From Diadema antillarum (Eukaryota), in contig NW_027271659.1 in NCBI RefSeq assembly GCF_040938485.1, forward strand, positions 248,001 to 312,000: DNA of 64,000 nt, written 5' to 3'. Below, one piece after another: positions 11,825 through 52,455 of this stretch; the stretch's first letter is position 1; each line of letters starts with the position of its first letter. Below the pieces are notes generated by a model, which was not told where the DNA came from, did no database searches, and was given only the letters and a program-made list of their open reading frames with translations. The translations under genes were made by a program, and so were the position numbers.

Positions 11825-11875
<51 letters not shown>

Positions 11876-12894: not shown

Positions 12895-12941
<47 letters not shown>

Positions 12942-15156: not shown

Positions 15157-15169
15157 AGTGACCGATCAG

Positions 15170-16366: not shown

Positions 16367-16402
<36 letters not shown>

Positions 16403-17409: not shown

Positions 17410-17453
<44 letters not shown>

Positions 17454-20220: not shown

Positions 20221-20234
20221 GTCGGTAGTGTGAC

Positions 20235-20271
<37 letters not shown>

Positions 20272-26200: not shown

Positions 26201-26201
26201 T

Positions 26202-26241
<40 letters not shown>

Positions 26242-26670: not shown

Positions 26671-26684
26671 GTTGTCATGGCAAC
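26671..26684. promoter_or_regulatory. RFX X-box motif
   Basis: GTTGTCATGGCAAC, one mismatch from GTTGCCATGGCAAC. Motif match only. Confidence 0.5.
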
Positions 26685-26839
26685 TGAGTGTCATACCATA
26701 AGCTGTCACACTCCCTCCTTGTGAACCCTTCATCCTGGGCCATTGCTACACCGCCATTGTCCCGTCTCGGGCCATTGCACGCTGGGGATTATTCGAACAA
26801 ACTGATCATCCTGTTTTGAAGGACGTCGGTGATTCGTGA

Positions 26840-28703: not shown

Positions 28704-28742
<39 letters not shown>

Positions 28743-28951
28743 CCTTCTTTCTCCTGTTCTCCCTCATTTTTTTTCTAAATATTAGCATACTCACGCGGGA
28801 ATAAACCTGGCAATTTTCTTCCATCTCGCGCCGCAAATCCCAAGAATAATTCCGTTTGAATATAGCATTGGCTCATAAAAGGCAAATACTATAAAAGAAT
28901 TACACAGAATCAAACACACATTTACACGCACACACACACACTCTCTCTCTC

Positions 28952-28984
<33 letters not shown>

Positions 28985-30190: not shown

Positions 30191-30670
30191 TTAAAGGGGC
30201 ATTCCAGACGATTTTCATAATTTCACATCATGTAGTTCATAAACATGACAAGTAGACTGCTCCATGTATAGATTTGTAGAATTTATTGCGGTACTTAAGC
30301 AGAGAAACCAATACTTTGAAGAACCTTAAACAAATTACAATGAACAATGATGATGACATAGGAGGCTCACATTTTTCAGAAATGTAGCTGTGTAATTCCA
30401 TTAAAATACCGCTTGCTTAACAAGTTTACCTGTGTATAACCTATGTATACCTTCTTCTTTTGCTCTGTTTTCTCAAGCCCAACCTCACGCATTCTTATGG
30501 TGAGGCTGCCATGTCATCACCCTTGTTCATTGCAATTTGCTAGACATTTTAAAAACACATTTTTATTCTTTATCCTAACTACGATAAATTCTGAAACTCT
30601 GTGCTCAGTATAACTCATTTACGCTTGTTCAAATGTACAAGTCTGAAAATCATCCGGAGGTCTCCTTTAA
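30191..30670. mobile_element. Non-autonomous DNA transposon (MITE), TTAA-flanked, Kolobok-like termini
   Basis: Left end TTAA-AGGGGCATTCCAGACGATTTTC; right end (reverse complement) TTAA-AGGAGACCTCCGGATGATTTTC. A related fragment lies at 34734. Confidence 0.7.
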
Positions 30671-32663
30671 GCCTGGAATGGATGGGCAACACCTTTCGCA
30701 ACATAAATACCACTTGCCGATCAGCAAATACGTCTGGAACCTTAGACTATGTCTCTTCAAATTAGCAAAGGAATGACATGATGGTCGTCTGTATTGCTCG
30801 TTTCAGGATAAAGGCTTCGGCGACGACATTTTTGACGCACCCCGAGATGACACTAGAACATGTTCAAGTGTCATCAACTGCAGGTATACACACATGTCCC
30901 TGTCAAAAGCTGTTCCTTCATGAAAGGAGGACGTGCCACTTTAGTCAGAAGGGATGGTATGCAAGGAACAACAGACAGACACACACACACAAAACCAGAT
31001 CAGTTCACCCCCATGTGCTCAGTGTGCTTGAGATTAAAAGACTCATTAGTGTTAATTAGCTTTGGAATACTCCAGTCTGCGCACTCTCTTCCCCTTGATC
31101 CCACCCCCATCCTCCTCCCCCCCCCCCCCTCCTTCCCCCACCCCCCGCTTCTTCTGCTTTTTCTTCTCCTCCTCCTCCGTAGAGTTCCCAGGCATTTTAC
31201 GTCGAGTGGCCATGCCGGGGGCTCCAGAGAGATCGTCATTTCGTAGAGCTCGGGAGATATAATTTTATTTGTTTTCAAGTGTGTGGGTGTGATGTGCAGG
31301 TAATCACTTTGTCTACGGCATTTCGGGCGTTTGCCTGAGCAATTCGTCAGAGTGTGGTTTGTATCGTAGAAAGAATTTCTCCCTCGTTTTCTTCCGGCAA
31401 GCACGGTGACGGATGAGTCTCCGATTTGTCTCGTACATAGAAAGCGTCGTGTTATAAGTACAAGACTTTTGCTGCGGTGTTTGGATTGGTTCATATCAAA
31501 TGAACATCACGTTCCGCTTTGAGAGCTATGTCACATTTTTTTTTCTTGCTCCAAGCAATATCATGAAGCCTTGCATATTTGTCAGAATGAATAAAAGAAA
31601 TGAAGAAGGAGGGAATATGAGAATCACGTTCGGAAGTTTGAAAGAGATCGACGCAGTTTCTTTCGGTGTTTTCATCTTTCTGGATATTGGAGTCATCTTT
31701 TGTCATCCGAAAATAATACAGCACCTCTCTTGAAATGAACGGGAAGTCGTGATGGCATCGGGATAAAAGAGACAAAGCTTATAGCTGTCACGTGTGAGTG
31801 GTTCCTCGATATCACACGTTTGGCCGTCGTGTTCAAGGGACGTCACGAAATTAAAGGCAGGGACAGCTGATGACGTATAGAAAATGAACAATTTTTGCCT
31901 TTGATGTCATCTACTTTCATATTCTTTTGACCCTTCCCTTGTAGATCGTGATTAAACACGGCATTACTGCGATAGGTTCTGTCATTCCCGAAATAGGTGC
32001 TCATATTATTGTCCTTACGCAACGGTTCACAGATTGTGTCACATCACACATGAAAATGGTTAAAATCTCAAGATCTTTGACGTCACAAACGCCTCTACTC
32101 CTACCACTCGGTATTACACGGGATAAAACTGAAACACAAAATAAAACAAAGCAAGAACGAACCCTCTGGCGTTTTGGTGTCGGTGTTTTGGTAAACGTCA
32201 TTATTTAAGATGATACATCTCATTGAGAAATGGCCTTTCTCCATCGTTTTTTATTACGGAAAGAACGTGATACGATTAGACAGTTGACTATAAATAGATA
32301 TGTCTTTTGTCAGGTTTGTTTGTTTGTTTGTTTGCTTATTTGTTTGCTCGCTTGCTTGTGTCTGTTGTTGTCGTTGCTGATGTTGTTTCTTGGCCAATTC
32401 TTTCAGGGACCGCCAAAAAAAAACTGCAATAGATGGATAAAACCATGTCATGTCAATGGAAGTTTAGCAACTGCTGTTGAGTCCAAGAAAAGTAATATAA
32501 AGATTGAAGATAATTATGAAGACTCGAAGAAGGTAAACCAGTCTACCACGTGATCTATCCAGCTGCTTCGTTCAGTTGGTGAGTGACGGAAATAAGACAG
32601 ACATTCGGGGAGTTCCGAAAGGAAAGACCGCGCACCTGTGAAAGAAAATATCACACACGTTTA

Positions 32664-32742
32664 ATTCATTTTGATTCAGTCGCTTCACTAGCAGCTAGGA
32701 TAATATCCTAGCTGCTAGTGAAGCGACTGAATCAAAATGAAT
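32664..32742. repeat. Perfect 79-bp palindrome (39-bp arms, 1-nt centre)
   Basis: ATTCATTTTGATTCAGTCGCTTCACTAGCAGCTAGGATA-A-TATCCTAGCTGCTAGTGAAGCGACTGAATCAAAATGAAT, no mismatches. Confidence 0.95.
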
Positions 32743-32817
32743 ATACGTCTCATTCCTTTCTTTCTTGTGTATGAGGGTTTATATCTATGTGTGTGTATAT
32801 ATTTGTGTGTAGTGTGT

Positions 32818-32865
<48 letters not shown>

Positions 32866-34733
32866 GCGTTTTGATATTGACACACCGATTTCCATTTGAT
32901 TATTCTTTATCATATGAAAGTGGATAAATTGCAGAATCTTTTTTTTTTTTGCGGTATGACCCAAATTATTAGGAAAATCTCTGAACTAAAATTACGGCAA
33001 AACGAAATGAAACGCAAATTTAATTCCATTGGTTCCCTCTGGTGCACAGTCGTCCCAGAATTGAGGCCAGAAACAAAAACAAAAAAATTGAAATGAAGCC
33101 CGAATGACATGACTGCACGTTGCCGATGGCACAGAGTCTTGAATGAAAGAAATAGACATCTCATTTCAAACTTGCTCTAGAGTGAGTCAATGCAATTTTC
33201 GGATTGATATAGGTGGTATTATTGACCTGCGAAATAATGTTGCAAGAATGCAGTCATTGGAATACCATTTTTCGTGGTAACTCTTACGTACAGTAACTAT
33301 AGTATGTCACATCTGTACCTTATTATTCTCTCATATCATCCTTCTCTCTATCTTTTTGTTGTTGTTAACATTCTTTACAATATCTTATGTTGGTTGGTTA
33401 AATTAATATGTCGATCAATCTTTGTAAATTCTATTAGATATTATTTCATTTTCTTCAGTGAGAAAGAAAGAGGCAGAGAGACTACAATAATTGGACGGAG
33501 GGTTTCAATATGCAACGATGAAGCTTGTTTTCTTTGCCATGTTTTCCTTACGTCTGTGGTCACTATCCGATTCGGTAAAGAGTTTGTGGACGGAACATTA
33601 CCAAAGTGGGCTCAACATATTGTACTAACATTCCATCAGAATCTGCTATATTCAATAATAGTAGAAGAAAGAGAAGAAGAGGAAAAAAACTGAAGAAGAC
33701 GTTGTGTCCCTACCAATTTCCCGGTAACTTTGTCACTGTTTGTCGCATCACTAGGCCTACGCACAAGTATATTGCGGTATATATCAATACACCAAAGCGC
33801 GCGGAGATTTTCGCACTGGGCGGGACTTAGGTTGCGGTCATTCCCGATCGTGTTGGAAACGGCGCGGAAGAAATTACAGTCCGGAACTACAATCTTCTTG
33901 AGATGGAGAGTATAAAGGAAAGTAAGAGAAGAGAAAAAACAAACAAAGGCATCTGCTTTGTTTCTCGCCATCATTCTACGGTAAAGTAGATGAATGGTTA
34001 AGTCACCACTTGGCAGGTAGTGCGAAAAAAAGGCCTGACATTATTGCTTTAACTTTCAATCACTCAGAACTCCCATTCATCCGGATGCCCGCTCGCCGTT
34101 GAGGTCCTAAGAATGACAAACTATCGATTTGAACTCCGTTGTGAGATGCATGCATATAAACGAAGTAATCAAACTGCAAACCGAACAATCAAGCACTAAA
34201 AAGAAAAAGACAACCCACGTAACATCTCTTACAATTAAAAAAAAAGATAACAGAAGCTATATAAAATGACAATGATAATCAACCACACTTCGAGTTAATA
34301 ATCTATGGATTTTAAAAAATGAACATTTTCGTCGAATTGTAATGCCTCGTTATAAGTATAGACACCTAGTGCATAGCTGTTTCTTCGTCATTGAAAACAA
34401 ACTATAGCAGTGCAAGTATCTTCCCACTGTCTCCCCATTACCATGCTTTCCTTTTTCTTTTGCGATGTCACATCGCATTAGATGAAATGGATTCATTTCA
34501 TTTTATGGCGCGGCAAGAAATATCAATTCGTTCTGGAGCCAATAAAAGTGATCCTCCCCCTCCCCACCCACCCCCTTCCCATCGCTTTTCTCAGGCTTCT
34601 CAACGTTCTGACCCCGGTCATTGTCTTTCATGCTCTTCCCCCCCCCCCCCCACCCCCCTCACCCCCTCTGTAAGCACCTCTCTCTCAATCTCGAGCGGTC
34701 TTCATCTTCCACATAATGAATAGGCCCTATACC

Positions 34734-34860
34734 TTAAAGAAAGCCTTCGGATGATTTTTCAGACTTTCACGTTTGAACAACTTTAACTCAGTTATACTGA
34801 GTACTGAGATTCAAAATGACATGGCAGCCCCACCGTGAGAATGTATGGGTGAGGTCTCTA
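34734..34860. mobile_element. Terminal fragment of the same family as 30191-30670, opposite orientation
   Basis: TTAAAGAAAGCCTTCGGATGATTTTTCAGACTT...GTTATACTGAGTAC...ATGACATGGCAGCCCCACC matches the reverse complement of about 30490-30670. Confidence 0.65.
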
Positions 34861-37029
34861 GGAAGTAGAACAAAAGAAGAAGGTATGTATAGATCATCAT
34901 GCATAGGTAAACTTATTAAGGAAGCGATATTGTAATGGAATTGCACTGCTTCATTTCTGCAATATGTAAAACACTCCTATGTCATCTACACTGTTCAGTG
35001 TAATTTGTTTAAGTTTTTTCGGAGTATTGGTTTCTCTGCTGAAGGACCACAACGTATTCCACAAATCCCTACATGGAGCTATCGATTTACTATGTCAGAA
35101 TGTGAAATTATGAAAATCGTCTGGAATGCCCCCCCCCCCTCCCTTAACTCCACACCATGCATATCCCTGCCTCTCTCAGTCCTCCTGGTCCGATCACCAC
35201 CCCTACTCCACCCACCAATGTCACCCCTCTATACACCAATACTCATCTCCAGCCCCCTTCATACACCCCTTCTGTTAGGGATGGGAAGGAGAGCTTACAA
35301 ATCACCTCATATTCCACGCCATCCTTCACCTCTTTCAGAGTAAATTTCGCAGTGTTCTTACAACTGGCATGATGTTCATTGCATGCAATAAAAGCAAGAG
35401 CGATAAGCACAAGTCCTTTCTCTAATAATATCTTCAAAACCGTCCGAGTGGGAGTCGTTGCCAGGCATCCTAATTCTGTCAATTCTCATACGAAGATACC
35501 GTTCGGGAGACGCCTGGCGGTTGGGCAATGGGTGAAATTCAAGCAGCGAAAAGGACAAAGTTGCCTTGGTATTCTTGAATATCAGCAACTTCCATTAAAG
35601 CCGACGAGAGCTCCTTTTCAAAACCTCTTACCAGAAATGCAAATTTAACAGCACTGCGAACATGCGATATCCTTAGCTCTTTTATGCGGGATTAAAAGAG
35701 AGATGCTTTGAAAATAAACCAAGGCGAAAACAAAACAAGACAATTACGGAAACTGTGGCTGGAACGGCTTTATATCGCATGGACACAACGAACCTTTGCT
35801 GTGCTGATCACGACACCTTACACATGCAGGGATGACTGATCAAGCTCTTACATGCACACATAATCAAGCTCCTCAACCTACTTCTGAGCCTTCCTCCTCC
35901 TCCTCCTCGTCTACAGAGCACCATACAAAAGGCGAATCAGCCACCTAGTTTCTGTAACCTCCCAAGTCATTTCCGTGGTATCCTAGGCAGGGATTTTATC
36001 CATCTAAGCATTACCTCCGCCTACTATTATCTCCAGGGCAGGGTAATGAAGTAACAGATCAAAGTATTAAACGATAGGAATTTTCCTGCAATGGTGCAGT
36101 GTGCAGTAATCTAGTTGTCATTTTGTTCTCATCGTTTGACTGTTTTATACATTGTGTTGTAAAATCTAGTCGTCTGCCCTGTCCGTAGTATACAGTCCCT
36201 TCCGGCAGCTCCTCATCATGTTTTGTTTTGATTCTTTTTCTTCATTGTCTATTTTTTCTGCTATAAGGGTAAAGTCTCCTTTAATTTCGACCTAGTTCTA
36301 CTTATTTCAATTCTCTGTTTCTTGTTTTGCTTTTCGCTTATCACTTTGTTTGCTTCCTTCATCTTCTTTTTAATTCTTCTGTTCCTTTTTTCGTCAAATC
36401 AATGATATCAAAAATTCAATTAGGAAGAACATGATCTGTCAAATGTTTTGGTTCCCAGACGCACCTTTGCTAGTGACAACGTAAATTTGTAGTAGTACGG
36501 TACTGTAAATGCTTTTTGTTTCTGCAGGCACAAATCACCCTCCCCCATTAGAAGACAGCGAAGCTACATTTCTATGACAGCCACTCCTTTACGGCAGACC
36601 GCAGTCATCACCTCACCGCATCACCCCGATACCCTCCCTTCACCGACACCCCGACCACAACTCCCCCTTGCCCTGCTCCAGTTAACTCCCATCCACTTAC
36701 TAGTAGTCCTCAATACCCCCATAAGTACGACATTCATGCTCAAATACAGCGATCGCAGTGTTTGTCTATCCGGTCGCATCCAATCTTCTATCAGTATTCT
36801 TTTCAAAATGTTTTCAGCATTGCCTTAAATGGAATGAAGAAAAAAAAGCAGTCATGTACAGACCAGCATCAGACTACACTCTCCTAAGCAATTATTAAAT
36901 GATTGCAACAATGTTTAACGGTGACCATGGTGACGATAACCTTTCCATCATGATAATAGAGCTTCGAATACGTGTGCATACAAAAGTAGATTTTGATGGA
37001 TGAGTGCTATATATGAGGGTGTCGGAGGC

Positions 37030-38210
37030 ATAGTACAGATCTTATTAGTTACCTGCTATCCCAAAATATTTGAAAAAGACAACTTCGGTAAATTAAATAA
37101 TCATTCCCAACGATGAACAATATTCGTTACATGTTACAATCTGGGTATAGAACGAACTCTTCAATTGAATTTTGTACAATTAAATAAAATCACACACTTA
37201 TTTTCTTTTCAGGTATACACTGATTGGAGTTCGGCATTTGACGCCATAAAATCATATCATTAAAATGTTCTTTATAAATTAGATAATCATGGTATTAACA
37301 GCGTTGCTATAACGCCTCCGTTTGATTTGTCTAATATGCAGTAATTTGTTTCATTCATCTTCGACTGATATCAAATGTAGAGTTCAGGGTTCTAAACTTG
37401 GCCCCACGTTGTTGTTGTTTTTTTTTACCTTTAGTAATGGCATTGCTAATGAACCTCCAATTCTTAAAGTCACAAGTTTTGCTGATGATACCACTATTCT
37501 GCTATTCCACTAATCCAGTCTAAATTTGAATGCCATGGTAGGAATTTCAAGTGCAAAAGTGATCAAAATATTAACCTGTTCAAAATGTAATGCGTTATCT
37601 TTGAATATGAACAAATCAAATTTCATGCAATTTCAAACTACAAACATAAGCATATACACCAGTCCTTTCATATTGATGCAAACATTGATGGCTTATCATT
37701 GCATTGCACACAAAAAAGTATTTAAAAAATTCTAGGTTTTACAACAAACCTAGAATAGGTTTATAAGGTATATACCTAACATAACAATTCAAATGACATA
37801 GGAATCTATTGTATATGAATATCAAGTTCTATCAATCATAAATTAGGGTAATACATATATGACACAGTATAGTATGATCATTCTTAATTACAGAAGAAGT
37901 TTGTAAGAATTTGTACTTGATATCTGTGCATACAACCATACTAAACCTTTATTTCAAAAAGTGAAAGTCCTTAATGTACAAGACGTAAAATATTCTATAA
38001 ACTGCAATATTCGTGTTCAAGAACATGAAAAATGTACTTCCATGTGTATAGCTACAGAGATTAGTTTTGGCATAACAGAAATTTCCACGCTTTCATAATG
38101 CGTACACGTAATGATAGTAGTATTCACTTGAATAAGTCCAAACTCTAAGTAGGTCATTATTTTCTTAGACATTATGGCTTTCCCTGATTGAATTTAATTC
38201 TTAAGCCCCT
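37030..38210 (+). mobile_element. Degenerate non-LTR retrotransposon (CR1/L2-type) reverse transcriptase fragment, 5'-truncated
   Basis: Frameshifted motifs in RT order: PAIPKIFEK, AFD-like, QGSKLGPTLL, FADDTTILL, LSLNMNKSNF, QKKFVRI, HTKPLFQK. Many stops. Confidence 0.85.
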
Positions 38211-39745
38211 TTAGAAAGAGACAAATGAAAGAGAACATCTTACACATACAGATACTGTACTGATGGGTTGTAAAAGTTGTTTACGAAAAAAAAAATTACC
38301 TAATCTTTCAAATATAGTGAACCCAATGATTAATCAAAATGGTAACGTTGTTATACTATCGTTGATTACTACCTCAGGCAAATCGAAAAAAAGGGTAATT
38401 GTCATCTTTCAAATGTATAAAATTCTGAATTGAAATAATTACGCAGTACTGGTTGCTGCAAGCTGTAAGGATTAGAACCAGCACTGACGGTCGTGCGGGA
38501 GCTCGGTGGTTTACTCGATAAGACGTCTGTCCGGTAATCAAGATGTGATATAGGTACGAATATTGCCCGACTATGTATGGTCATGATTTTTTTCTTGTTT
38601 ATCATGGCTACTACTAAACATTGATTAACGTCGATGTAGGGTAATTTTTCAATCAGTTGCATTTTCATCTTTATTATGGCTTCACTGATCTAATTAATAT
38701 TTCAGTCTATATTAGTCCATCGTTCACCACATTAGTTACTGTCCTATCATCTCGTTAAAGCTGCGTTTACACCACGTTCCCGGCAATCACGGCAATCATG
38801 TTTCAGGCCACCGTGGAATAAATGGGATGGACGTGAACCGACGCAGTGAGATGGTATTGTCAAACGTGACAGACCGTGTCAGATTTTAAACTGTCACAAA
38901 TTTTGCCACGGCAGTCCCGGTTCTAATGAGGAATTTTGTATGCCGTGACAAAACGGGCTGAACGCAACGAAACACGGCTGCACGTAATAGGACGTAACAA
39001 AACTTGGAGGCTGTCCGTAACGGGACGCGAAGGAAAACATTGATAGTCTAGCCTGATCAGGCGCCGTGAGAACAGCGTCTGATAGCTATATGTTCACCGG
39101 GGCGAGGACTGGAACGAACAAGACTAGAATACTAGACTTGACGTGGGTAAAGTTAGGGAAATAATTTTTCAGTTCAAACGAGGACAGTGATGGTGTCGGT
39201 TCATGTGGTTCTTATGCTAATCTACAATGCATATGATCCGCACAAGACTAGGATGAAAGACGTTTCTGATCTCTACAGGCTTCGAAAGGTCGTTATACTC
39301 ATCGCTTTAAAACCTCGGCCATTATGTTCGAAAGCAGGTGTGCTTACATGAAAAGTCACAACACACATCTCACAAGGGTTTCCTTTCCACGCGGTTTTAT
39401 AAGCGGTTTCTTCATGTGCTCTTTGCGTCATTGACACCACTCCCATTCTTTACAAGAAGACAAACCAATCCCAAAATGAAGGGGTATAAAAAAACAGCAA
39501 ACAGACAAGATATGTAGTATATTTGTCTTTCTTTGGTAACAAACGTCTTTGTGTCTCTCCACACACAATTGGACTCCCCCCAGTTCGCCATGCTTGGTGT
39601 TTGGCAACATCCAAACACCACTTAATAACTGGCATCAAGCCCCTTCGAAGGTGTCATCTCGCCCACTTGCGAACTCATAAAACCACCTGTCCTTGAAACA
39701 GTAGAGCGCGAGTGTCGACAAGTGCGAAACAGACAGACAAACACA

Positions 39746-39792
<47 letters not shown>

Positions 39793-41585
39793 ACTGATCT
39801 TGATAGACAGAAATATTACTTCTTTGGTTATACAACTCGGCGCATCCATGACTACCTGCATGTAGGTGTCACTGCTGTTGCTATTGTTCTTGAGTCCGCT
39901 ACATAGGTGCAACATCTTATAACGATAACTTGAGTGTTTGTGAAACATGCCACGACAACTCAAGGAAGAAAGAGATTATTGTGTGCGTGCATGTGCATGT
40001 GTGTGTATGTTTTTCAGTTTCTGTTTTCACTGGAATATTGATGAACAAGGCTCCGATTTGATAGTGAGTGCTCCAGAAGAGGCGCTAATGCATCAGCTTA
40101 AAACTGCGTCTTAATGGAAGATGGGGAAATACTACTTGTCTTTGGGGGCCTGTAAAGTTGGAGCAAGGCTTAGTGTAATCAACGGTCTAAGCACGTTGAG
40201 ATTCTGCTAAGCACCCATTAAAATCTCTGGCAAAGGGTACAAAGTGGCGGGGTATTTACACGCTAAGCATTCTGTCTTTGTCACATGTGAATTTTAAAAG
40301 GCCACGATGTTTTTTAGATGTCAAAATATGAAGGAAAAGGAATAAAGAGACACTTCAAAATGGCAACAAGGAGCAGTCGTAAAATTATCAGGAAAAAAAA
40401 CCGATGAAACAAAAGACATACTGTCTATTGCAAGAATGATTAAGATTATAACAATCACGATCTTGGTTGTTATAGTGATGGTTATAATAACTATACAATC
40501 ATTGTAATAACCACGATAATGTAAAGATGATAAAGCTGATATAATTAATATCATTGTCCTTAAGTTGGAAGTGATAGACAAAGAAACATCTAAAGCTTTC
40601 AAATCAATGGTTGATACGACAAGAAAGTGAGAAAGTTAATCAATTAAAACAGACATAGGTGAGAGAAATTAGAAAAAAAGATGAATGCTGGTCGTACAAT
40701 GACTTTGCAAATGGACAAAAATCAAGTTAACGTTCCTTCTGAGCTTGACGTATAGGATTACAGACAAAAAGCATTCTCATATAGATGCAGATATATTGTA
40801 TACGTCCAAATGTCGTCGAGAACCCGAGGTACAACGTGTGCATCACTAGACTAGATGTGATAAAAGTTGACAGAATTGGACTTGGTAAAAGAATTGGACT
40901 TGATAGTCAAAGAGAATAGAAGACTCCGGCCGTGTTTTTCTTCCGATCATCACGGTCCGGCATTTCATCCTTGTTGCGGTTTCCGTCATCTCTTTACATT
41001 ACTCTGGGACTAATCAGTTCGGCAGACCACCAAAAGACCAATATCGAATTGTCTCTATTGAACTTCCACCGCTTGACAAAGCCACTGCCTTGCTAGACAG
41101 CACTGCACTTTTCGCGCCGACGAAGCTTGAAACTCTTCTCTCCTAAATCTAAAATCCCATAGTGTCGTAAAACTGGTTGACAGAAAAAGACTAGGACGAT
41201 CAAGAAAGGTAAATTAGGCAGTTTTAATCAGTGCTATGCCATAAAATAGGTGCTCAAAAGAAAACACAACCGAGTAATTCTCGGATGTTTCACGAGTGCA
41301 TTGACAAATATTTGGCCACTTACTAAGTGTTTTGGACCTCTTGTATCTCTAACCTACCAGCCGACCATAGCTGCTCTAACACTCCCAACTAATTGTTATT
41401 GCTCTCCATTTTCACTATTAAACAGCCAGCTACATAGATTTACCCCCTGGCGATCTGAACTAAAAAAACACCCTGAATGCATTTTTATTTGCAAATTTCT
41501 TTCCTTGATATCATTTCAAAGGGGACAGGGATGATTAATGAATTGAAGTCACGTTTCTCTGGTGCGAAATCATGTGCCAGTGACA

Positions 41586-41586
<1 letters not shown>

Positions 41587-41652
<66 letters not shown>
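41587..41652. repeat. (CA)n microsatellite, one of many (also about 7457, 12897, 16368, 28707, 32822, 39743, 54916)
   Basis: Directly visible dinucleotide runs. Confidence 0.95.
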
Positions 41653-41655
<3 letters not shown>

Positions 41656-42779
41656 GAGAGCGAGACAGGAAGAGAAGATGTAGAATGGTCAAAGACATGC
41701 AAATATACCATGTATACCTTAACATGGTTAATTTATTCGGTTTTAGTGTCACGTCAAACGAAATTTAAAGAAAAAACCCCGTAGAATTCTTGATTGGAGA
41801 AAAAGAAAAGAAAGTCATAATCTATCATCATTCTGTTGTGTTTCTTTTCCCGAAGCTATTTCTACTTTTTTTTTTTAATGTGGAAACTACCAGAACAGAA
41901 GAACAACATATCATCAGCAAACATATTAACCGGTTTCGAGAATATGGAGAGATATAGATACAATTGTTATCGAAACCAGAAATTGATCTTACCATTACTT
42001 GATGAACAAATTACAGTAATTATCAATACAAACGAAGCGACCACAAAACCGATAATACAAATTGCACAATAAAACAAATGACAAACAAGTATAGTGATAC
42101 ATATATTCTCCCCACTGGGTTCGAATCATTAAAGCAAATTGATAGATCATCACTGTTTCCCCCTAGTTTTGAACCATTTACACTGAAAATAAGGTTATTT
42201 GTCTAGAAACAAAGAAAGAAGGAAACACACGAACAAGCATTCTCTCAAAACAAAACAAAACAAAACAAAACACAGTACTAACTTCGGCTTTGATCCATAT
42301 GCGGTGCCTACATTTACAAACCTTTATACGGGCAATAGATTACTGTATCCCAAATTACAATTTTGAGTTCTTCTATCGTCCTAGAGCAAGAATCATTGTT
42401 CCTTTCTTCGAGCGAGGTCTTGATGAAAATAATTCATAAGCAGAAAATGTCAGACTTTGTTTTTCAAGCCATCAAATTTTCATTTCAACCTTTGAGGCGA
42501 GAGCCAAACTGTTGCATCATTCAGGTATCAATATCGACATTGATCGAAAGAGCGTGTTGTTGTCAGGAACGTCCAAACATGCAACCACGTGTAATTACAA
42601 TTAGGACAACAGACCCACGTCCTATTTTCTTTTTAACAATTCCCGCCTCCCCCTCCCCTCTCTCTCTCTTTCACTACCCGTTTGTGTTTTATGTACCATT
42701 GGCATCTTGCTCAGTCCTTCTACTTGTACCTAATATGTTCCTTTGTCTTACTTCTTATTCTACTATTCATCTATCGATC

Positions 42780-42820
<41 letters not shown>

Positions 42821-43279
42821 GTGTATAAATTACTTCTTTATTCATAAGATAATATCACTTCATTATCATTTATTTTTTGTTGTTTTCTGTAATATTATGC
42901 TTAAGTTATAACCAATTCACATATGCGTTCCTTTTCCCCATATTGAGTGCACTGTCAGGCAAATTCTGTCACAGTCAGGTAAATTCTGTCACAGTTTTGA
43001 GGTAACCTCAGTCAATACTAGTGTTCAAGATCGATGATGTTTCTTCAGGGGGGGGGGGGGGTTTACGTACTAGCCTTCGTCATTTGTTGGAAGCACTAAA
43101 ACTGGAAGATCTCTAATTTATGTTCACTTTCTTGGAGTAAAAGGAATTACTATTAGACTTCCTGTATCAATGACGCACTCTGGAAGAAAACAGCTGTGCT
43201 ATAAAAATGTGAAAATCCTTCATTCGGAATCATGAGATTTCATTATTGTTGCGATACCAATGTATCGGGGTCAGAGGTG

Positions 43280-43300
43280 AAAGGCAGACAATAAGGCTGA

Positions 43301-43352
<52 letters not shown>

Positions 43353-43353
43353 G
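43280..43353. repeat. Compound (TTG)n(AAG)n microsatellite
   Basis: Directly visible; gives the spurious poly-L/poly-Q ORF 43243-43602. Confidence 0.95.
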
Positions 43354-43924
43354 AAGAAGAAGAAGAAGAAGAAGTGCCTGTTGCTCCATGTCTAAAGCTG
43401 TATTATTATCCCCACCATTCTCTTCCCAACTAGCAATTCTGAAAGCATTTATGCATTTTACAGGCTTTGGAAAACTCCGATAATGGAACAAATACTTATA
43501 CGAACCACAAAGGAATCTCATGAAAACAAAAATATTGATATTATCTCGTGAAACATAAAGAATTTGTTTACACGATAACAAAACGATACATCTCCAAAAC
43601 ACACACTATTTTTTTTTCTAGAAGGAAATTGATGGGCTTATTAGAGAGCTGGCGGCTGGGGAATGTTCCTAATCCGAGATATGATCAAATGGAATCTTGA
43701 CAAAGAACATCTTTCCTGTTCACATAGATAAAGATGGTATCCCTCTAATTTCAAATCCCTGGCATTTAAGTCACGCATGTCCTAGCTTGTACATGAACTC
43801 TTCTGGCTTATGTTTTCTACATTGTTTTCTATCAAGGTCCTTTGATTTATATCTACGAGTTCGAGGCACCGCAGACGTGAATTCTTTGGGAAATGCATAT
43901 GTTACTGAATCAGAATTGGACTGA

Positions 43925-44150
43925 AGTGAATTGAATTGAATTGTGATGTGTTTCACATGGCCGCTGTAAAAAAAAAAGAGAGAAAGATAAAGAAACAATG
44001 GATATTTGTAGCTGAATATCAAACAACGACAAGACCGGCAGAAGACTAGGTAAGAGTGCTTTGCCCAGGGGCGCAGCCGCTGCTACGTGGGTTCGAACCA
44101 GGGGTCTAATGATTGAAAGCTCTGTTCCTGAGAAACAACGGATCCACACA
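43925..44150 (-). mobile_element. Degenerate CORE-like tRNA SINE
   Basis: The plus strand reads a (GAATT)n tail, then GTGCTTTGCCCAGGGGCGCAGCCG (CORE-like) and GGGTTCGAACC (tRNA-head-like), the layout of a reversed CORE-type SINE. Confidence 0.45.
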
Positions 44151-45103
44151 CCTCACCTGATAAAATCCACCCATCCTCGTTATTCTTTTATTCAGCAGCC
44201 AGTCTATCATCTTGTTAGCATCGTTGCAGACATTTCCTTCATGTGGGACTGGACACTCCTTTCATATCGATAACGCCTCGTAGCATATTTGCGTTTGGTA
44301 CATTATTTCAATAACTGTAAAATGTATGAGAAGATCAACCTTGGAACTTTCAGTTTTTATCGAGTTTGTTATGACTCCGAATAGTGCAGGGCTACTTGAC
44401 TTTCTTATAACAGGGATAAACTTTTCGTCTCGACTGTGAATAATTGGATCGGCGTTTCCATATCGTTTTGAAGTCAATAAGATTCTAGCATTTAGAATAA
44501 AAGGCGGATAGATGGACGTTTACACGGCCGATTATGGAAACAAAAAGAGAGAGAAACTCCAAAGTGACAGTCAAATAACAGCATGTAAAATCAAACGGAT
44601 TTCTAAAGTAAAATGAGAGATACGCGAGATGCTTTTAATCATGCTCTGTAAGATGTCTTCGTTTTCTTGGATTTCTTTTCTTTTCTTCGGATATCGTATT
44701 GATGTAACGGACAAGAAAATATTTGAAGAGTGAATAGTACTTTTGCTTTAGTAAAATCGCGTCATTTTGATTTCGTTACGGAAGCGGCGCTCGCAATGTA
44801 TTCCAACCGTAGTTCCATAAGTAAGTCAGCAAGGTTCTTTGTTTCATAGGGCCTCTTTCTCGTTTGCCTCGAATATGCATATGGAAACTTTGACATATTA
44901 CGTTCCTGATGTGAAGCAGTGAATTTGAGATTGCTTTCGTCCTTCTACTGGACAGTGAATTGTGGCCAGGATTTCCCAAGCATTTGTTATATAATCCGCC
45001 TTGTAATGATCTCGATGTCAACTATCCTGACATTCATCGCCCATCGGTCAAAACCCTCATAAAGGCGGGCTTATATTACAGATTTTGATCTTTTATTATT
45101 CTG

Positions 45104-45395
45104 CTCTCTAAAAAAAAATCGAGTGAAAATATCCACTCTTAAAGGAGTGAATACAAAAAAGAGTGAAATTAGAGTGAAATTGGAGTGAATTTGGAGTGAA
45201 AATGTTCATTTTCACTCGTTTGAGAGTGACGTCAGGGATCCCTCCAAAATCTTCGAGTGATCACTGAGGTCACTCCAAAATGAGTGAAAATGAACATTTT
45301 CACTCCAAATTCACTCCAATTTCACTCTAAATTCACTCTTTTTTTGTATTCACTCCTTTAAGAGTGAATATTTTCACTCGATTTTTTTTAGAGCG
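45104..45395. mobile_element. Palindromic (foldback) MITE with GAGTGAA subrepeats
   Basis: Near-perfect inverted arms of about 120 bp (45104-45225 and 45275-45395), with CTCTAAAAAAAATCGAGTGAAAATAT termini. Confidence 0.85.
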
Positions 45396-47684
45396 TAACC
45401 TTCGGTTATCTTAGATTTGGAGATGGGTTCATATTTTAGGATAACCTCAAAATCACATAACTGTGTAAGGATCCAGACATGCGACTCGATTATTGATTCG
45501 ATTCTAATATATGCGTTATATCTCTATTCATCGCTGACGTTTATTTTATTTAGTTTACACACTCGATCAAGTCCTATAAATATTTCATGCCCAGGGATGC
45601 ATTTTTTTTTTGGTTAGTTTACAAATTGTGGTTACTGATTCATCTCCATGTGCGTGCCCCAGTGCCGTCTTTTCGATAGCATTCATGTGCTCAACCAAGT
45701 CCTTAGTGCCTCATAGAAAGAACATCATTATTCAGGATGGGTGACATGAGTCAATACTCGATGGTTCACATACGTGGTGTTGTCGGTCTTTCTTGTCTTT
45801 CTCCACTTTGGCATTCCATCATGCTCTGTGTCTAGCCAAGTATGTATGAACCCCATTATAAATTCTTTTTAAAATTCATTATGAATTCTCCTTTAAATCG
45901 AAATAAAATCTGGCCGAAAAACAAACAAACAAATAAGCAAACCAAACGCCTGACTTTGCACTTTTTAGTTTTCGTTTTTCGATTTTGACGTTCCATCCGT
46001 CTGTTACCCAACCTTGATGTATTGAAATTGATCAAAATGTAAATAAATCACTTTCCAGTACAAACAGTGCCATGTCATCTGATACGTGCGCGAAATCGTG
46101 AAATGCGTACGAACAATCAGCCCGGCAGGTTGCGTATTTAAGTTCTCCGTATCTCTTTTCCTCTGGCCCCGTGCATCTCCCTCATTCTTTCACCTGCCCC
46201 CCCTTTTTTTCCTACCATCAATACACCACCACCACACTCTCTCCCTCTTTATGTCCTCCTACCCCCCCCCCTCTCTCTCCCTCTCACTCTCCTCTTTCCC
46301 CCAATACATCTTAAATCTCACAAACTTACTCTCAGTTTTGCTCTAACGCTGTTTGCTAAGTACTCAAGAGAGCTCCCCTTCCGCTATCTTTCGATCTCTT
46401 GGCGTAGCTACGCATATGACGACGGTCCCTTGTCCCCACATAAATGTACTGTCTTCTTTTGGAAATCTATATCTTCCATCTCTATATCTCTTTCTTCAGT
46501 ATATATGTTTGGATCTCCCTCTCCCCCACCCTCACGTTCTCTCTTTCTCTGTTTGTCTCTCTCCCTCTCCTCCTATTCCCTTCTCCAAACTATGCCTGTC
46601 TCTCTCCATCTCTATCTCTAGCCCCCCCCCCCCCCCCCACCCCTTTCCTCTCTCTTGCCTTTAGATGGCTGGCCGTATTTACAAATCCTCAAATCCATCC
46701 AGTATGGATGCAAGCGAGGGTGCGTGGTGAAAGTTTGTGCATATGCTCACACCCTTGCAGGCACAGACAAGCTTCGACGGTTCATTTTCGCCTGAAAGCT
46801 TTGGCATTTGAGGCACATTTCTCGGCAAAAAATATAGGCCAGGGTAGAATCCAAGTGATCTTGCCATTTTGTTTGAGAGAGATCGCAGTGACCGGATAAA
46901 GTGGTATATTGCCGACCTGTGTAGAGCTGTTTCCGAAGCTATTTCAGCCAGATAACTCGTTTTTATTTTTATCTATAACGACAATACTTTTTTTTCGGTT
47001 TGATTGACTTGACATCTCCGGATGACACTCAAACGTTGGCGCCTCCTTTGATCCCTGTCGTAAAAGAAGTGGCGGACTTTTCGGGGTCAACAACATACAA
47101 ACATCATAATCACACCATCTCTTCTCGAGGAAAAGTTCAGACTTCATGTTGAGAGAAAATGTAGCAGGAGGACGCAAACTAAAAATATCATAGCTGTCTT
47201 ATTTCAAAAGCGAAGAGAACGTCACTTGCTTCATTTCAAACGAGTCAGCCAGTCAGTCATTCAGTCAACGGACACTTCTGTCAAACAGCGCTGTTACAAT
47301 ACAGCGATTAGCAGGGTCATCCCTCCTTTGAACTAAATATCAGTACGTTTGAAATATATCTTTGTATATACGTATGTATATAATTGACAGAAAATACGAT
47401 ACAGTGCAATACGATACAATACAAAACAATATAATACAATACAATACAATGCAATACAATACAATACAATACACACAGTCAGTCTCAATTGTAATTCTTC
47501 AATATCCTTTTTTAGTTAGCGTCATTGTCAGCTACCAGTTCAATCGTGCCCATTTCCTTTTCTTCTTCCTTTCTTTTTTTTTTTTGGGGGGGGGGGAGGA
47601 AGGGGCAAGCCATATGGTGTCACAACTTCGCACATACTAGTTATTCTATCGCCTTCTGAAATTTGTGGGGATTGATATCATCCA

Positions 47685-47698
47685 GTAACCATGGAAAC
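47685..47698. promoter_or_regulatory. RFX X-box motif
   Basis: GTAACCATGGAAAC matches the RFX consensus GTNRCC-AT-RGYAAC-type palindrome. Motif match only. Confidence 0.5.
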
Positions 47699-47735
47699 TA
47701 GACAGATCTCAAGCACCTGCCATGGCATTCTCTAC

Positions 47736-47812
47736 CTTCCTCCTCCTCCTCCTTCTCCTCCTCCTCCTCCTCTTCCTCCTCCTCCTCCTCCTCCTCCTCT
47801 TCCTCCTCTCTT
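47736..47812. repeat. (CCT)n tract
   Basis: Directly visible; source of the spurious poly-P/poly-E/poly-R ORFs. Confidence 0.9.
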
Positions 47813-48371
47813 TCCCTCTCTGATCTCTTCTCATCAAGCCCCCCCCCCAAGGAAAAAAAAGGAGTCCAGAAACAAAACCAAAACAAATCATCTCCTTTTG
47901 AAATCAATCTCCAGAACGCACGACCCTCTCTCCAAGTCCTCTTTGCCAGAGTGCAAGAGCCGCTGGCATTTCCATAATTGCCCTTCCCTACCACCGGCCA
48001 TTAGAAAGAGAGAATCACTGGCGTGGGTCTGTCCGTCTGTAGCCCATTTTGACATACACAGGGAATATCCTGATGCTGCTACCTTTCGTCAATAATTCAC
48101 GCCGGAAGATTAACACATGCAATAGCTAATGGACCGTTGCTTGTTGATTCAATAGGGAATTGCAGACATAGCGGGACACGAAACAACAACAACAACAACA
48201 ACAACAACGAAGAGCAGCTTTGAATCTGTGGATAAAATTTCTCGTGCCAAGGTCTTGATCCTGGAAGTGTGTTCCTATTCATGTACGAATACTTGCGACA
48301 CGCTCCTTTCAAAAGTACAACACAAAGCATAACCAACAGTCCGAAGCAACCAGCAAAATTCATAAATGCAC

Positions 48372-48740
48372 TTAAAGGCACAATTTACCATATGCAGACG
48401 AAACAAAAACCCAGCTTCAGTGCTTCAAAATAGTTGTAAAATGTGAGCTAGGGATAGAAACAACCAGTGTAAAAAAGTTAATATCAGTTTAATCAATGTT
48501 ACGTATTGTTAAATGTAAAAAAATGTGAACAATAGCTATGATAAAATTGTGTCTAGACTAAGCCGTCTATAAGTTATGGTTCAGTGAGAAAATCGTGACA
48601 TCACCTCATATTTTAGGTTTTATTGCAAAATATTTATATGGTAGGATGTTTTGTGATACGACTGGCCTACACATATGCATCAATGTGACAACTTGAGCAT
48701 TTTTTCAATCTCTGTTCCCAATGGTAAGCAGTACATTTAA
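48372..48740. mobile_element. TTAA-flanked MITE, Kolobok-like termini
   Basis: Left TTAA-AGGCACAATTTACCAT; right (reverse complement) TTAA-ATGTACTGCTTACCAT. Imperfect TIR. Confidence 0.55.
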
Positions 48741-50551
48741 CTTAATGGATATAGACGATAAAATACCAGTTCACGACAATTTTTGTTTGACAATAAATCA
48801 GAAACACAGAACTATTTTTTCTATACCGTCACTTCCTCTCGCTTTTCTTTTCGGTGTTTCTCCATTTTGCCTGCCATTTAATTGGTGCTGATTTTCAACA
48901 GTCGCGTCAATTTCATTCGATTTCTAATCAATTTTCTCCTTGCGCGGAGTCAATTATTTTCACATCGCGCTTAATCGAGACATTCCGAATCCTCGAGGAA
49001 GTTATTAGAAGTGGTTTCCTTGCAGTACACTCGCGGGGAGGGAAAGAAGGTAAGAAAATGGCTTGACAGTGAGGGTGAGAGATCGATGGATAAAGGGTGA
49101 AAGACGGGGGAGAGGAGCGTAAGTGTTAAGTAAACGGTGACGCCACAATACCACGGCGTCGTCCGCGGTGTAGCACTTCTCATAAACCTCTTGGCACTGT
49201 CTAGCAGCTCCAGCATTTCTGTGTAAAGATGCCTCGAAATTCTCGGCCGCAGATGAGTGGGCTGTCCCGAAATCTCATTCACGAGAGTTGTTCGGCGTGA
49301 CGAACATCTAAACTTTATTCCATCTTGTCAAGATGTCATGCAGAAGATTTGGGCTGCATCTAAGAAGTTTTTTAGTCTCCATGTCTATTGGAAACATTAT
49401 TAAGCTCGGATGTTGATTGCATTGTGAGGCAGGGAGCGTAAAGCTTATAAGCATCCGAAGAAGACGGCATAATGTTTATGGAAAATCTCCACAGCTAGGA
49501 AATAATTGCTCGAATCGATCCTTTAATATCGTGAGAGCTTTATCGGAGAGTGTTATACCTATTCCCTGACTCTTCAAAGGATCCTTGATGTAGTTTAAGC
49601 TTCAACAGTGAATCAAAGAACTATAATCATGCGCATTAGATTTTTAATCAACTGTTTAACTGTTGAATGCACGAACATTAAAGTTAAAAAATTGGAGCAG
49701 CATCAATTTCCTCTTTCCTTTACCTTTGTTTTGCCTGTGAGGTGCGGAATCTTTCTCAAATTTTAATGAAATGTAATGAGCTCGGTATGGAAGACATGTC
49801 TAGAGTTGATAATCTCTGATTTCAAGTTAGAGGACCCTCCTCGGCGTTTAGTCTTCGTGAATTTATTTTGCTTGATACAATAGCAGCGATCGAAAGAAGA
49901 ATGCCCTAGCCCCTTCCTCACCATCGATACCATCACTATGCAGTGCATGTATAAGTGGGTCACATGTGACTTTGGTCTGAGGGCGGTAATTATGCAGAGA
50001 TTCTCTAAACGACCACTACGATTACAAGAGAGTAACACAACCAAACCGCCGTTAGAAAGAAGATACAAAACCAACACGATAGATACACACAAGAAAACTC
50101 ACCCCAACATCCTTTTTTTTTTTCCCCAGAGAAAGTTCAGAGGAATTCTAGCTCAAATGCTTCCCTGGGTCTAGCGGGATAAAAAACAAAATCATATTCT
50201 GCCTGCAGTTGCTTTAAGCTGATCTCTCGAAAATAATCTTTTTAAGCTGGATTCGCTCCTACACTCACGTACGCTAATTCAATTTCTCGGCTCTGTTCCA
50301 GCGTCTTTTTCTTTTCACCTACCTGTGGATTTGTGCGCGGAGTACACAGACTTTAAGCAGGTAGTAAGTTAGCGCGAAAAAAACAGAATAATCATCCACA
50401 ACCACCCACATTCAACACTGTGCTGCAGTTCATTAGCGGTTTTTTTTTTTCGTCACTTTAAATCAATCGACAAAGAAGTGAAGTCATCATGGATAACATA
50501 ATGAACTGAAAAGAAGAAAAAAACAGAAGGAAGGTTTGGAAGCAGTCTTAC

Positions 50552-50671
50552 CTCTTTCGTATCCCTGGTTTCCCTTGCTGGTCTACATTCCGCTTTATGC
50601 GCCACCGAAGAGAGCATTAAAACCAAGTTGACGATTAGAAAAAGTCCCAGGGAGTTCGAAAGAAACTTCAT
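50552..50671 (-). CDS. PPLNP1: First coding exon (signal peptide plus N-terminal propeptide) of pedal peptide-like neuropeptide precursor 1; partial, downstream exons not found
   Basis: ATG at 50671 (GCAATGA). 40 codons, MKFLSNSLGLFLIVNLVLMLSSVAHKAECRPARETRDTKE, with a hydrophobic h-region and likely cleavage after AEC. Phase-0 donor GAG|GTAAGA at 50552/50551. Ungapped match of about 24/40 to the S. purpuratus PPLNP1 N-terminus as I recall it (MKFSGNGRGAFLVVNLIFVLCLVDHMAECRPARKTRDVDE); not database-verified. Confidence 0.85.
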
Positions 50672-51117
50672 TGCTGCTTTCTTCCTCGTTGAACAACCCA
50701 CAGATAAATAGGGCAAAATGAAAGACGAAACTTCCTCGCAACTGTCTTTTTCTTCTTTAACTCAAATCTACCAAACACACATTAAGTTGCCTGAGTCCTA
50801 CGGACAGAGCTATAGCTGAGCACTGGACGTCGCAGTCTTCTGCGCTTTAACTGAATACTCGATAGGGATGTGGACGGGGTAAATAGCCGACTGATGCCCG
50901 GCTGGTCCGCCGGATGTGGTGGATACGTCTCTACTCGTCTGCTCGCGTGCTCCACCTTGGCTTGTGGTGAAAGCACACACGGTGTTGCCAAGCACGGATG
51001 AACGGGATTCTTCCAAGAATGTGTGTGTCCGCGTACGACGGCCGCTTCACTACTGAAGGAAAAAAAAATCGCGGCAAGAGATTGATGCCTCGCCAGGGAT
51101 GAATGATATATCAATGT
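50672..51117 (-). other. Predicted 5' UTR of the neuropeptide gene
   Basis: Lies between the predicted TSS and the ATG. GC/CpG-rich, with only one upstream ATG on the sense strand (50782, uORF M-C-V-W-stop) against many on the opposite strand. Confidence 0.55.
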
Positions 51118-51198
51118 GGGTATGAGTTGGGCGGGTTTTTTTTTTATAGACACACACGCGCTGCCTGATGACGACGCAGAACCCTGACTTTTCATTGG
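51113..51198 (-). promoter_or_regulatory. Core promoter of the neuropeptide gene: CCAAT box, TATA box, initiator
   Basis: On the minus strand: CCAAT at 51198-51194, TATAAAA at 51148-51142 and Inr-like CCACATT with A(+1) at 51117. The A(+1) is 31 nt from the TATA and about 80 nt from the CCAAT, the canonical spacing. The surroundings are CpG-rich. Confidence 0.65.
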
Positions 51199-52455
51199 CC
51201 AGAACGACAAACGCACAGTCCAATGATGTAATCTTCGTTTTATGCGTTCTCGCCATATACCTACGTCTGTTTGTATGTATGTACATGTATGTATGTATGT
51301 ATGTATGATGGCTTATGTGTTTGTATGTATGTAAGTATGTATGTATGTATGTATCAATGTCTTAGCATATTTATAATTACATCTACATGTTCTTCTATTT
51401 ATCTACAGTATGTATTTTTGTTGTCTGTCTGTCTGTCTGTCTCTGTCTCTCTGTCTTTCTGTGTCTCTTTCTCTCTGTTTTTTTTTTATCATGTTCGATT
51501 AAGCTCGTATAATGTCAGATTAGGCAGTGATTTATTTATGAGATAATCTCTACGTCTCTGTGACTGAATTCGAGAAGACCTATTCAGGCACACGGGAGGG
51601 GCGTCAAGAGAAAAGTGCTCTATTACTATACGCTGATGGTCCCACCCTCCGGCGGCTTTGCTGTCTCGCCTCTCAGGAGAAAGAGGATTTCGATGGTCAG
51701 TCTTGCGTGGGTGAGCGCCAATTCTTGACCACATTCTCTTGGACATCGTAAAGTGGATTAATTACAAATCGATATACTCCTTTGTTGTGACGCCCTTACT
51801 CGTAACCGCGTGAGGAGGAAACGTCGCTATTACAGGTGCAGAGAGAGTGAAAGTACCGTGTCGCTGGCGTCTCCGGTCCCTTACGTGGCCCGTAGAAAGC
51901 ACCGGAAAGGGCGTCTTTCCGGCTATTTGGGTTTCGATCCGACTATACGCCCATTAAAGTGCACCGACTTTGTGATTTGGTCATGCAGTAATCCGATAAT
52001 CAGCAATCACGGCGCAAGCTTCAATCCTGATTGTTGTATCTATTTTTTTAGGCCTTTGCATTCTTTGTCTCAGGCAGGCTTTTGAAAGCTGTGGATATCC
52101 TCAGCGTTACCCCCTGTTGCACTCTGAAGTGTAAGGTTACCGTCCAAGCGCTCATCAGAGCTAATGAGTAAATCTCATTTCAAGTAGCCAGAATATTAAC
52201 ATTATCGGACTCTATCAAGCCACATACATACTCACAAACACACCCACAAAAAGATAGCCAAAATGATAATAACAATGGTGATGATGATGATAACAATAAT
52301 AATGATAATAACAATAATGATAATAGTAAGAGAAGTAGTAGTAGTAGTAATAATAATAACAATAATAATAATAATAATAAAGATTGATATTTGATTGTCC
52401 TTATTCAAAATGTCAATATTACAGCGCTTTACAAAAAGGAGGTTATTACACAACA

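What the first reader, a model, noticed from the sequence alone, without database searches (positions are those of the whole stretch)
50552..50671. Unannotated-looking first exon of a pedal peptide-type neuropeptide precursor (PPLNP1) hidden in a short junk-like ORF
Inside the 87-aa minus ORF 50453-50716, an internal ATG starts a 40-codon signal peptide plus propeptide that stops exactly at a consensus donor. It aligns without gaps to the recalled S. purpuratus PPLNP1 N-terminus at about 60% identity. That is low enough to suggest a more distant echinoid, which would be useful for pedal peptide/orcokinin evolution.
Basis: partly seen in the sequence, partly recalled or inferred. Interest (0 to 1): 0.7.

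Follow-up and report, generated by a model that had tools for sequence, protein, structure and literature searches.

The report
First exon of sea-urchin pedal-peptide gene
The short reading frame is very probably the true first exon (start codon plus secretion signal) of a sea-urchin pedal peptide/orcokinin-type neuropeptide gene whose peptide-coding exons lie 74 kb away, outside the window; it is an ordinary member of a known gene family with a very long first intron.

Summary
The sequence features are real. On the minus strand an ATG at 50671 opens 40 codons with a classic signal-peptide shape, ending in phase 0 at GAG|GTAAGA (donor GT at 50551-50550).

The window holds no peptide exon. On the same strand, 73.8 kb downstream and outside the window (C771:222407-224708), lies a pedal peptide/orcokinin-type gene body with no start of its own:
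- Exon 2 opens at a phase-0 acceptor and has no ATG or signal peptide.
- Exon 3 holds the peptide repeats.
- Together they encode about 25 xEPLxxGF peptides flanked by KK/KR.

With the 40 codons the product would be about 543 aa. The published S. purpuratus PPLNP1 is 510 aa with 21 copies and two amidated peptides; here too, two peptides end in Gly-KR.

Of 923-959 ATG-to-GT candidates over 75-87 kb, this is the only credible signal-peptide exon. It sits in a 693-bp stretch with no substitution between the two haplotypes (mean 2.5%). Both haplotypes keep the same layout.

Verdict: first reading supported, about 0.8. A known gene family, so low interest.

The parts
50552..50671 (-). Coding part of exon 1: ATG plus 40 codons, ending in phase 0
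   Evidence: Translation. Identical at DNA level in the second haplotype (C1468:217402-217521). Top-ranked of 959/923 candidate signal-peptide exons.
50600..50671 (-). Predicted signal peptide, residues 1-24 (MKFLSNSLGLFLIVNLVLMLSSVA); cleavage after residue 29 is also possible
   Evidence: Read from the sequence: K2, hydrophobic core L8-L20, S/A at -3/-1. Mean Kyte-Doolittle 2.93 over the best 10 residues. No SignalP run. The literature gives a 29-residue signal peptide for SpPPLNP1 (PMC5860471).
50546..50551 (-). Splice donor GTAAGA after GAG
   Evidence: Haplotype substitutions begin 8 nt beyond the exon end, at 50543.
50672..51236 (-). 5' flank (5' UTR and presumed promoter) with no substitution between the two haplotypes
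   Evidence: Substitution-free run 50544-51236 (693 bp), the 3rd longest of 1956 runs in 85.6 kb aligned at 2.5% mean divergence. Divergence stays low (about 0.4%) up to about 52400. The promoter role is inferred.
1..50551 (-). Window part of intron 1. The whole intron is C771:224709-298551, 73,843 bp. Exon 2 (C771:224339-224708) and exon 3 (C771:222407-223548, stop included) lie outside the window.
   Evidence: No PP-type ORF in the window. Gene body found, boundaries read. Same layout on haplotype B with a 75.1-kb intron. Other conserved blocks in the intron show no coding frame.

Best explanation
Window 50552-50671 (minus strand) is the first coding exon of a sea-urchin pedal peptide/orcokinin-type neuropeptide precursor gene of the PPLNP1 type. 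It supplies the start codon, a signal peptide of about 24-29 residues and the first few propeptide residues. After a 73.8-kb intron it is spliced in phase 0 to exon 2, which encodes an acidic spacer and the first peptides. Exon 2 is joined in phase 1 to exon 3, which encodes the tandem peptide repeats. The product of about 543 residues would enter the secretory pathway. It would be cut at KK/KR sites into about 25 peptides of 14-17 residues, mostly GFGGAMEPLSSGF[V/I]. Two would be C-terminally amidated. Shown here: the sequence features, the downstream gene body without a start of its own, phase compatibility, uniqueness of the candidate, conservation between haplotypes, and family-level homology of the body. 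Inferred: the exon 1 to exon 2 splice, expression, signal-peptide cleavage and peptide processing.
For: (1) ATG, 40 codons and GAG|GTAAGA are present. (2) The PP/OK gene body lies on the same strand 73.8 kb downstream. Exon 2 starts at ...catcgcag|GAT in phase 0 and has no in-frame ATG or signal peptide. Exon 2 to exon 3 join in phase 1, giving a complete peptide FNE-G-ALEPLNAGFYS. (3) The exon 3 product matches multi-copy xFDRLxSGFVKK precursors at E = 9e-26. The exon 2 product matches genomic ORFs of two other echinoid-like sources at about 60% identity, E = 1e-27 and 6e-23. In one of them (L020) homology starts at the same acceptor. (4) It is the only credible signal-peptide-plus-donor candidate among 959/923 over 75-87 kb. 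(5) Haplotype substitutions: 0 in 693 bp spanning exon 1 and its 5' flank, 28 in the next 753 bp of intron. Positive controls: exon 2 0/370, exon 3 4/1142 (all silent), introns about 2.2%. (6) Both haplotypes keep the same order, strand and spacing. (7) About 543 aa, about 25 copies and two Gly-KR peptides, against published SpPPLNP1 at 510 aa, a 29-aa signal peptide, 21 copies and two amidated peptides. (8) The PPLNP2-like paralogue has the same design: a phase-0 acceptor before D..QEE, no signal peptide of its own, and none within 19.6 kb upstream. Its 166 aa against the published 204 leave about 38 aa for an exon 1.
Against: There is no RNA evidence. No RNA run could be listed for this stretch, so the 50552 donor has never been seen in use. 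No cross-species counterpart of the 40 residues was found. None lies within 10 kb upstream of exon 2 in L020, and the word search gave none, though both negatives are weak. The exon has no paralogue in its own genome. Haplotype conservation is not unique: 12 substitution-free runs of 500 bp or more occur in 85.6 kb. A small extra exon between exons 1 and 2 cannot be excluded. The signal peptide was judged by rules, not by a trained predictor.
Confidence: 0.8

Rival explanations
1. The 40 codons are a real first exon, but of another small secreted-peptide gene whose later exons hide in the 74 kb. The PP/OK gene would then use a different, unrecognised first exon.
For: Intron 1 holds about ten further blocks of 450-1000 bp with no substitution between haplotypes.
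Against: None of those blocks shows a coding frame. No other credible signal-peptide exon exists for the PP/OK body over 75-87 kb. The phases match.
Confidence: 0.07
2. The ORF is a chance ATG plus hydrophobic run plus GT in non-coding DNA, and the true first exon lies further upstream than the stretch examined, or is one of the weak candidates.
For: Signal-peptide-like ORFs arise by chance in AT-rich DNA. One weak rival, C771:245335-245442, also has no haplotype substitution. No homologue of the 40 residues was found anywhere.
Against: The donor score of 10.2 bits and the clean n/h/c organisation are unmatched among more than 900 candidates. The substitution-free run ends 8 nt after the donor. 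The rival has an acidic, uncharged N-terminus and a donor of only 5.3 bits.
Confidence: 0.06
3. Exon 1 is correct but the model is incomplete. One or more short exons, coding or 5' non-coding, lie between exon 1 and exon 2 or upstream of exon 1.
For: No transcript data. The intron is very long and holds conserved blocks. The open frame continues 30 codons upstream of the ATG (102 codons stop to stop).
Against: Exon 1 and exon 2 join in frame without any extra exon. About 543 aa is already a little above the published 510 aa.
Confidence: 0.07

Closest known systems
[quoted passage not shown]
   Same: A long precursor with an N-terminal signal peptide and many tandem peptides ending in SGF-x between dibasic sites. 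Two peptides are predicted to be amidated. Length is similar (about 543 aa against 510).
   Different: About 25 copies here against 21. The dominant peptide here is GFGGAMEPLSSGF[V/I].
SpPPLNP2 (204 aa, 10 copies) and its counterpart in this genome at C137:1936602-1937099 / C894:473350-473787
   Same: The same family and the same gene design: a phase-0 acceptor before an acidic D..QEE spacer, with the signal peptide on a separate, distant exon.
   Different: Short (a 166-aa peptide exon, about nine FGxSxNMEPMQSGFF copies), 57% identical over the matched part of the repeats, on another contig. The window's exon 1 has no similarity to anything near it.
Starfish myorelaxant peptide precursors (SMP, ArPPLNP1; PMC5069636, PMC5656890) and protostome pedal peptide/orcokinin precursors
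   Same: Multi-copy precursors of 14-17-residue peptides with hydrophobic residues near both ends and a PL..GF core (SMP is FGKGGAYDPLSAGFTD). The exon 3 product matches unnamed multi-copy xFDRLxSGFVKK precursors at E = 9e-26; named bivalve proteins (Dreissena, Mya) are only weak hits (E about 1e-4).
   Different: Different copy numbers and peptide sequences. Muscle-relaxant function is shown only in starfish, and an SpPPLNP1 peptide showed no effect on urchin preparations (PMC5656890).

Membership tests
Pedal peptide/orcokinin-type neuropeptide precursor | Tandem copies of 14-17-residue peptides bounded by dibasic (KK/KR) cleavage sites | tested here: met
   About 25 copies in exons 2 and 3, outside the window.
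Pedal peptide/orcokinin-type neuropeptide precursor | Peptides with a hydrophobic or Phe residue near the N-terminus and a C-terminal SGF-x motif (PMC5860471) | tested here: met
   GFGGAMEPLSSGFV/I and variants; motif definition.
Pedal peptide/orcokinin-type neuropeptide precursor | Sequence homology to recognised family members | tested here: met
   Exon 3 product against multi-copy xFDRLxSGFVKK precursors, E = 9e-26 to 1e-13. The hits carry no curated names, so their family assignment is my reading of their repeats. Pfam has no model.
Pedal peptide/orcokinin-type neuropeptide precursor | N-terminal signal peptide on the same polypeptide | tested here: inconclusive
   The 40-codon exon has signal-peptide form and joins exon 2 in frame. 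The join itself is not observed, because no RNA run was listed.
PPLNP1 orthologue (as opposed to PPLNP2) | Long precursor (about 510 aa, about 21 copies) with two amidated peptides | tested here: met
   About 543 aa, about 25 copies, two peptides ending Gly-KR, against the literature. A separate short paralogue exists.
PPLNP1 orthologue (as opposed to PPLNP2) | N-terminus alignable to S. purpuratus PPLNP1 | not testable with these tools
   The sequence was absent from the protein searches and from the papers and supplements read.

The most novel reading that the evidence does not exclude
The 74-kb first intron, with about ten blocks that are invariant between haplotypes, might hold alternative peptide exons or promoters. 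Exon 1 would then serve more than one precursor by alternative splicing, as in calcitonin/CGRP-type genes. Nothing here shows this. The conserved blocks look non-coding.
Probability: 0.04. Interest if true: 0.45.

Novelty: new member of a known kind. Interest (0 to 1): 0.25.

Why it matters
It completes a gene model that automatic annotation could easily get wrong. The signal-peptide exon sits 74 kb from the peptide exons, so a predictor may call a precursor without a start or miss the gene. The sea-cucumber study found that only 20 of 44 neuropeptide precursors had been annotated from the genome (PMC6586643). A full PPLNP1 orthologue with about 25 copies adds one data point on copy-number change in echinoderm pedal peptide/orcokinin genes. 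It also marks a candidate promoter for a neuron-specific gene. It does not change what is known about the family.

Tried and rejected
- RNA evidence: the look-up of sequencing runs listed no RNA run. None was listed, which does not mean none exists.
- Peptide exons inside the window: none found by ORF, dibasic-site or motif scans.
- Word searches: exon 3 gave only distant relatives and evidently missed closer ones, such as the 323-aa ORF of L020. Exon 2 gave nothing. Exon 1 scored over residues 1-40 gave nothing. These blanks are weak because of the length window and the requirement for shared words.
- Big search with exon 2: it found only two genomic-ORF orthologues without N-termini.
- L020 (another echinoid-like contig): no counterpart of exon 1 within 10 kb upstream.
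- Pfam: only a low-complexity hit (DUF1720) for exon 3, nothing for exons 1 and 2.
- Literature: no paper or supplement held as text prints the S. purpuratus precursor. Ophiuroid 'Pedal peptide 1' precursors begin MMKFLW..., like MKFLS... here. That is too short to count, so I rejected it as evidence.
- Other conserved intron blocks as exons: rejected, no coding frames.
Each exon was searched separately by reference.

Full report
**Observation.** The minus-strand ORF 50453-50716 (87 aa from a TTG) is in the window. Its internal ATG at 50671 opens exactly 40 codons, MKFLSNSLGLFLIVNLVLMLSSVAHKAECRPARETRDTKE. These are followed by GTAAGA, so the junction reads GAG|GTAAGA. The peptide has the form of a signal peptide: a basic residue at position 2, an uncharged hydrophobic core at residues 8-20, and small residues at -3/-1 of a site after residue 24. 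A site after residue 29 is also allowed. No trained predictor was available.

**Where the rest of the gene is.** The window holds no ORF with peptide repeats or pedal-peptide-like motifs. The window is C771:248001-312000 of a 1.75-Gb assembly that carries a second, 97% identical copy of the region on C1468, evidently the other haplotype. I fetched 150 kb beyond the low edge of the window, which is downstream on the minus strand. It holds two ORFs on the same strand:
- C771:224247-224816 has an acidic spacer followed by GALEPLATGF... and GFMGGAMEPLGAGFM-KK.
- C771:222410-223582 is a 391-aa frame of GFGGAMEPLSSGF[V/I]-KK repeats.

**Exon boundaries.**
- Exon 2 starts after ...ttctcatttacatcgcag|GAT in phase 0. 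It has no in-frame ATG and no signal peptide.
- Exon 2 ends at GAAG|gtatga in phase 1.
- Exon 3 starts after ttcataacag|GT. The split codon is Gly, which gives a complete peptide FNE-G-ALEPLNAGFYS.

The 40 codons end in phase 0, so they join exon 2 in frame. The sum is 120 + 370 + 1139 nt, or 543 codons. I did not build, store or search the joined sequence.

**Family.** The exon 3 product matches multi-copy precursors with xFDRLxSGFVKK repeats at E = 9e-26 to 1e-13, plus weak hits to bivalve proteins. This is the pedal peptide pattern. The peptides here have the C-terminal SGF-x motif that defines echinoderm pedal-peptide-like peptides (PMC5860471). Pfam has no model for the family.

The exon 2 product finds two ORFs called on genomic DNA of other sources at about 60% identity:
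- P0012, on a 20-kb ENA contig.
- P0013, on a Logan contig.

P0012 begins MQ|DLEREED.... DNA homology between that contig (L020) and this genome starts at the same acceptor. So the exon 2 boundary is conserved, and that gene too needs an upstream exon. No counterpart of the 40 residues lies in its 10 kb upstream.

**PPLNP1 or PPLNP2.** The literature gives SpPPLNP1 as 510 aa with a 29-residue signal peptide and 21 copies, and SpPPLNP2 as 204 aa with 10 copies (PMC5860471). Two SpPPLNP1 peptides are amidated (PMC6586643). The gene here has about 25 copies, and exactly two peptides end in Gly before KR. That fits PPLNP1.

A second, short locus exists at C137:1936602-1937099, with a haplotype partner on C894. 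It is a 166-aa exon of FGxSxNMEPMQSGFF copies and fits PPLNP2. It also opens at a phase-0 acceptor before an acidic D..QEE stretch, lacks a signal peptide, and has no credible signal-peptide exon in the 19.6 kb upstream. Its 166 residues against the published 204 leave about 38 residues for a first exon, close to the 40 proposed here.

**Is this the right exon 1?**
- *Candidate scan.* I listed every ATG-started frame of 18-90 codons ending at a phase-0 GT on this strand, from exon 2 up to the top of the window (87 kb, 959 candidates). With a hydrophobicity measure and a generic donor matrix written from general knowledge, the finding ranks first. The rest are CVCV- or III-type low-complexity frames.
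- *Relaxed thresholds.* It still ranks first of 923. Most rivals carry substitutions or indels between haplotypes, and all have weaker donors and poor signal-peptide form.
- *Haplotype layout.* The 40 residues, exon 2 and exon 3 are 100% identical in protein between haplotypes. The layout is kept, with intron 1 at 73,843 bp on C771 and about 75.1 kb on C1468.
- *Haplotype substitutions.* Across 85.6 kb of aligned haplotypes the substitution rate is 2.5%. The run with no substitution at window 50544-51236 (693 bp) is the third longest of 1956. It begins 8 nt after the exon end and covers the exon and its 5' flank. The exon 2 run (662 bp) is fifth.
- *Positive controls.* Exon 2 has 0 substitutions in 370 bp and exon 3 has 4 in 1142 bp, all silent. 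Introns run at about 2.2%.
- *Caveat.* Twelve runs of 500 bp or more exist, so this supports the exon without singling it out. The other blocks show no coding frame.

**What is not shown.** No RNA run could be listed for the stretch, so the use of the 50552 donor and the join to exon 2 are inferred. The word searches with exon 2 and with the 40 residues were blank. Those blanks mean little, given the length window and the need for shared exact words. The exon has no paralogue in its own genome. An extra small exon or a 5' non-coding exon cannot be excluded.

**Weighing.** The strongest argument is a prediction that came true. The haploid genome has only two such loci. Add the uniqueness of the candidate and the haplotype pattern, and I put the reading 'first coding exon of the PPLNP1-type gene' at about 0.8. 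I did not check it, and it only adds plausibility.

**Mechanism.** Inferred from established knowledge of neuropeptide precursors:
1. Translation starts at the ATG.
2. The signal peptide directs the precursor into the secretory pathway and is removed.
3. Prohormone convertases cut at KK/KR, and carboxypeptidase trims the basic residues.
4. The two Gly-ended peptides are amidated.

In starfish, related peptides relax muscle. In the urchin, one SpPPLNP1 peptide showed no effect on tube foot or oesophagus (PMC5656890), so the role in echinoids is open.

**Verdict.** It is an ordinary orthologue of a gene family known in sea urchins since 2012, notable only for its very long first intron. Interest is low, and its value lies in annotation.

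Noticed in passing
window 8579-9579, 36236-36903, 26916-27568, 20511-21064, 16916-17449, 15409-15937, 1977-2487, 31177-31655, 7204-7656: Blocks of 450-1000 bp inside intron 1 with no substitution between the two haplotypes, against a 2.5% mean. None has a convincing coding frame. They may be regulatory elements of the neuropeptide gene or simply low-diversity patches.
   Followed up: partly
window 51237-52400: Haplotype divergence stays low, about 0.4%, for a further 1.2 kb upstream of the invariant exon 1 block. It then rises again, suggesting an extended constrained upstream region.
   Followed up: no
L008:1613-2836 (-) = C771:209613-210836: An uninterrupted 408-aa ORF about 11.6 kb downstream of the PP/OK gene, with several hydrophobic segments and a GPCR-like look (GN..VV..SRYLAI..). 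Pfam gave no family at E <= 0.001. A membrane protein next to a neuropeptide gene may deserve a look.
   Followed up: partly
L011:3985-5619 (-) = C771:181985-183619: A 545-aa uninterrupted ORF with an acidic Pro/Glu-rich N-terminal part and hydrophobic segments. No Pfam family.
   Followed up: partly
C137:1936602-1937099 (+) (L032/L033) and C894:473350-473787 (-): A PPLNP2-type paralogue: a 166-aa exon with about nine FGxSxNMEPMQSGFF peptides. Its signal-peptide exon is not within 19.6 kb upstream.
   Followed up: partly
C666:60739-71984 and C290:557586-579929: Clusters of 480-570-aa open frames with 31-35% identity to the exon 3 repeat region. They may be unrelated Gly-rich repeat proteins or a further repeat-peptide family. 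Not examined.
   Followed up: no
C771:219694-220751: The longest substitution-free run in the 85.6 kb (1058 bp) lies 1.7-2.7 kb downstream of the PP/OK stop codon and has no coding frame. It may be the 3' UTR or a regulatory element.
   Followed up: no
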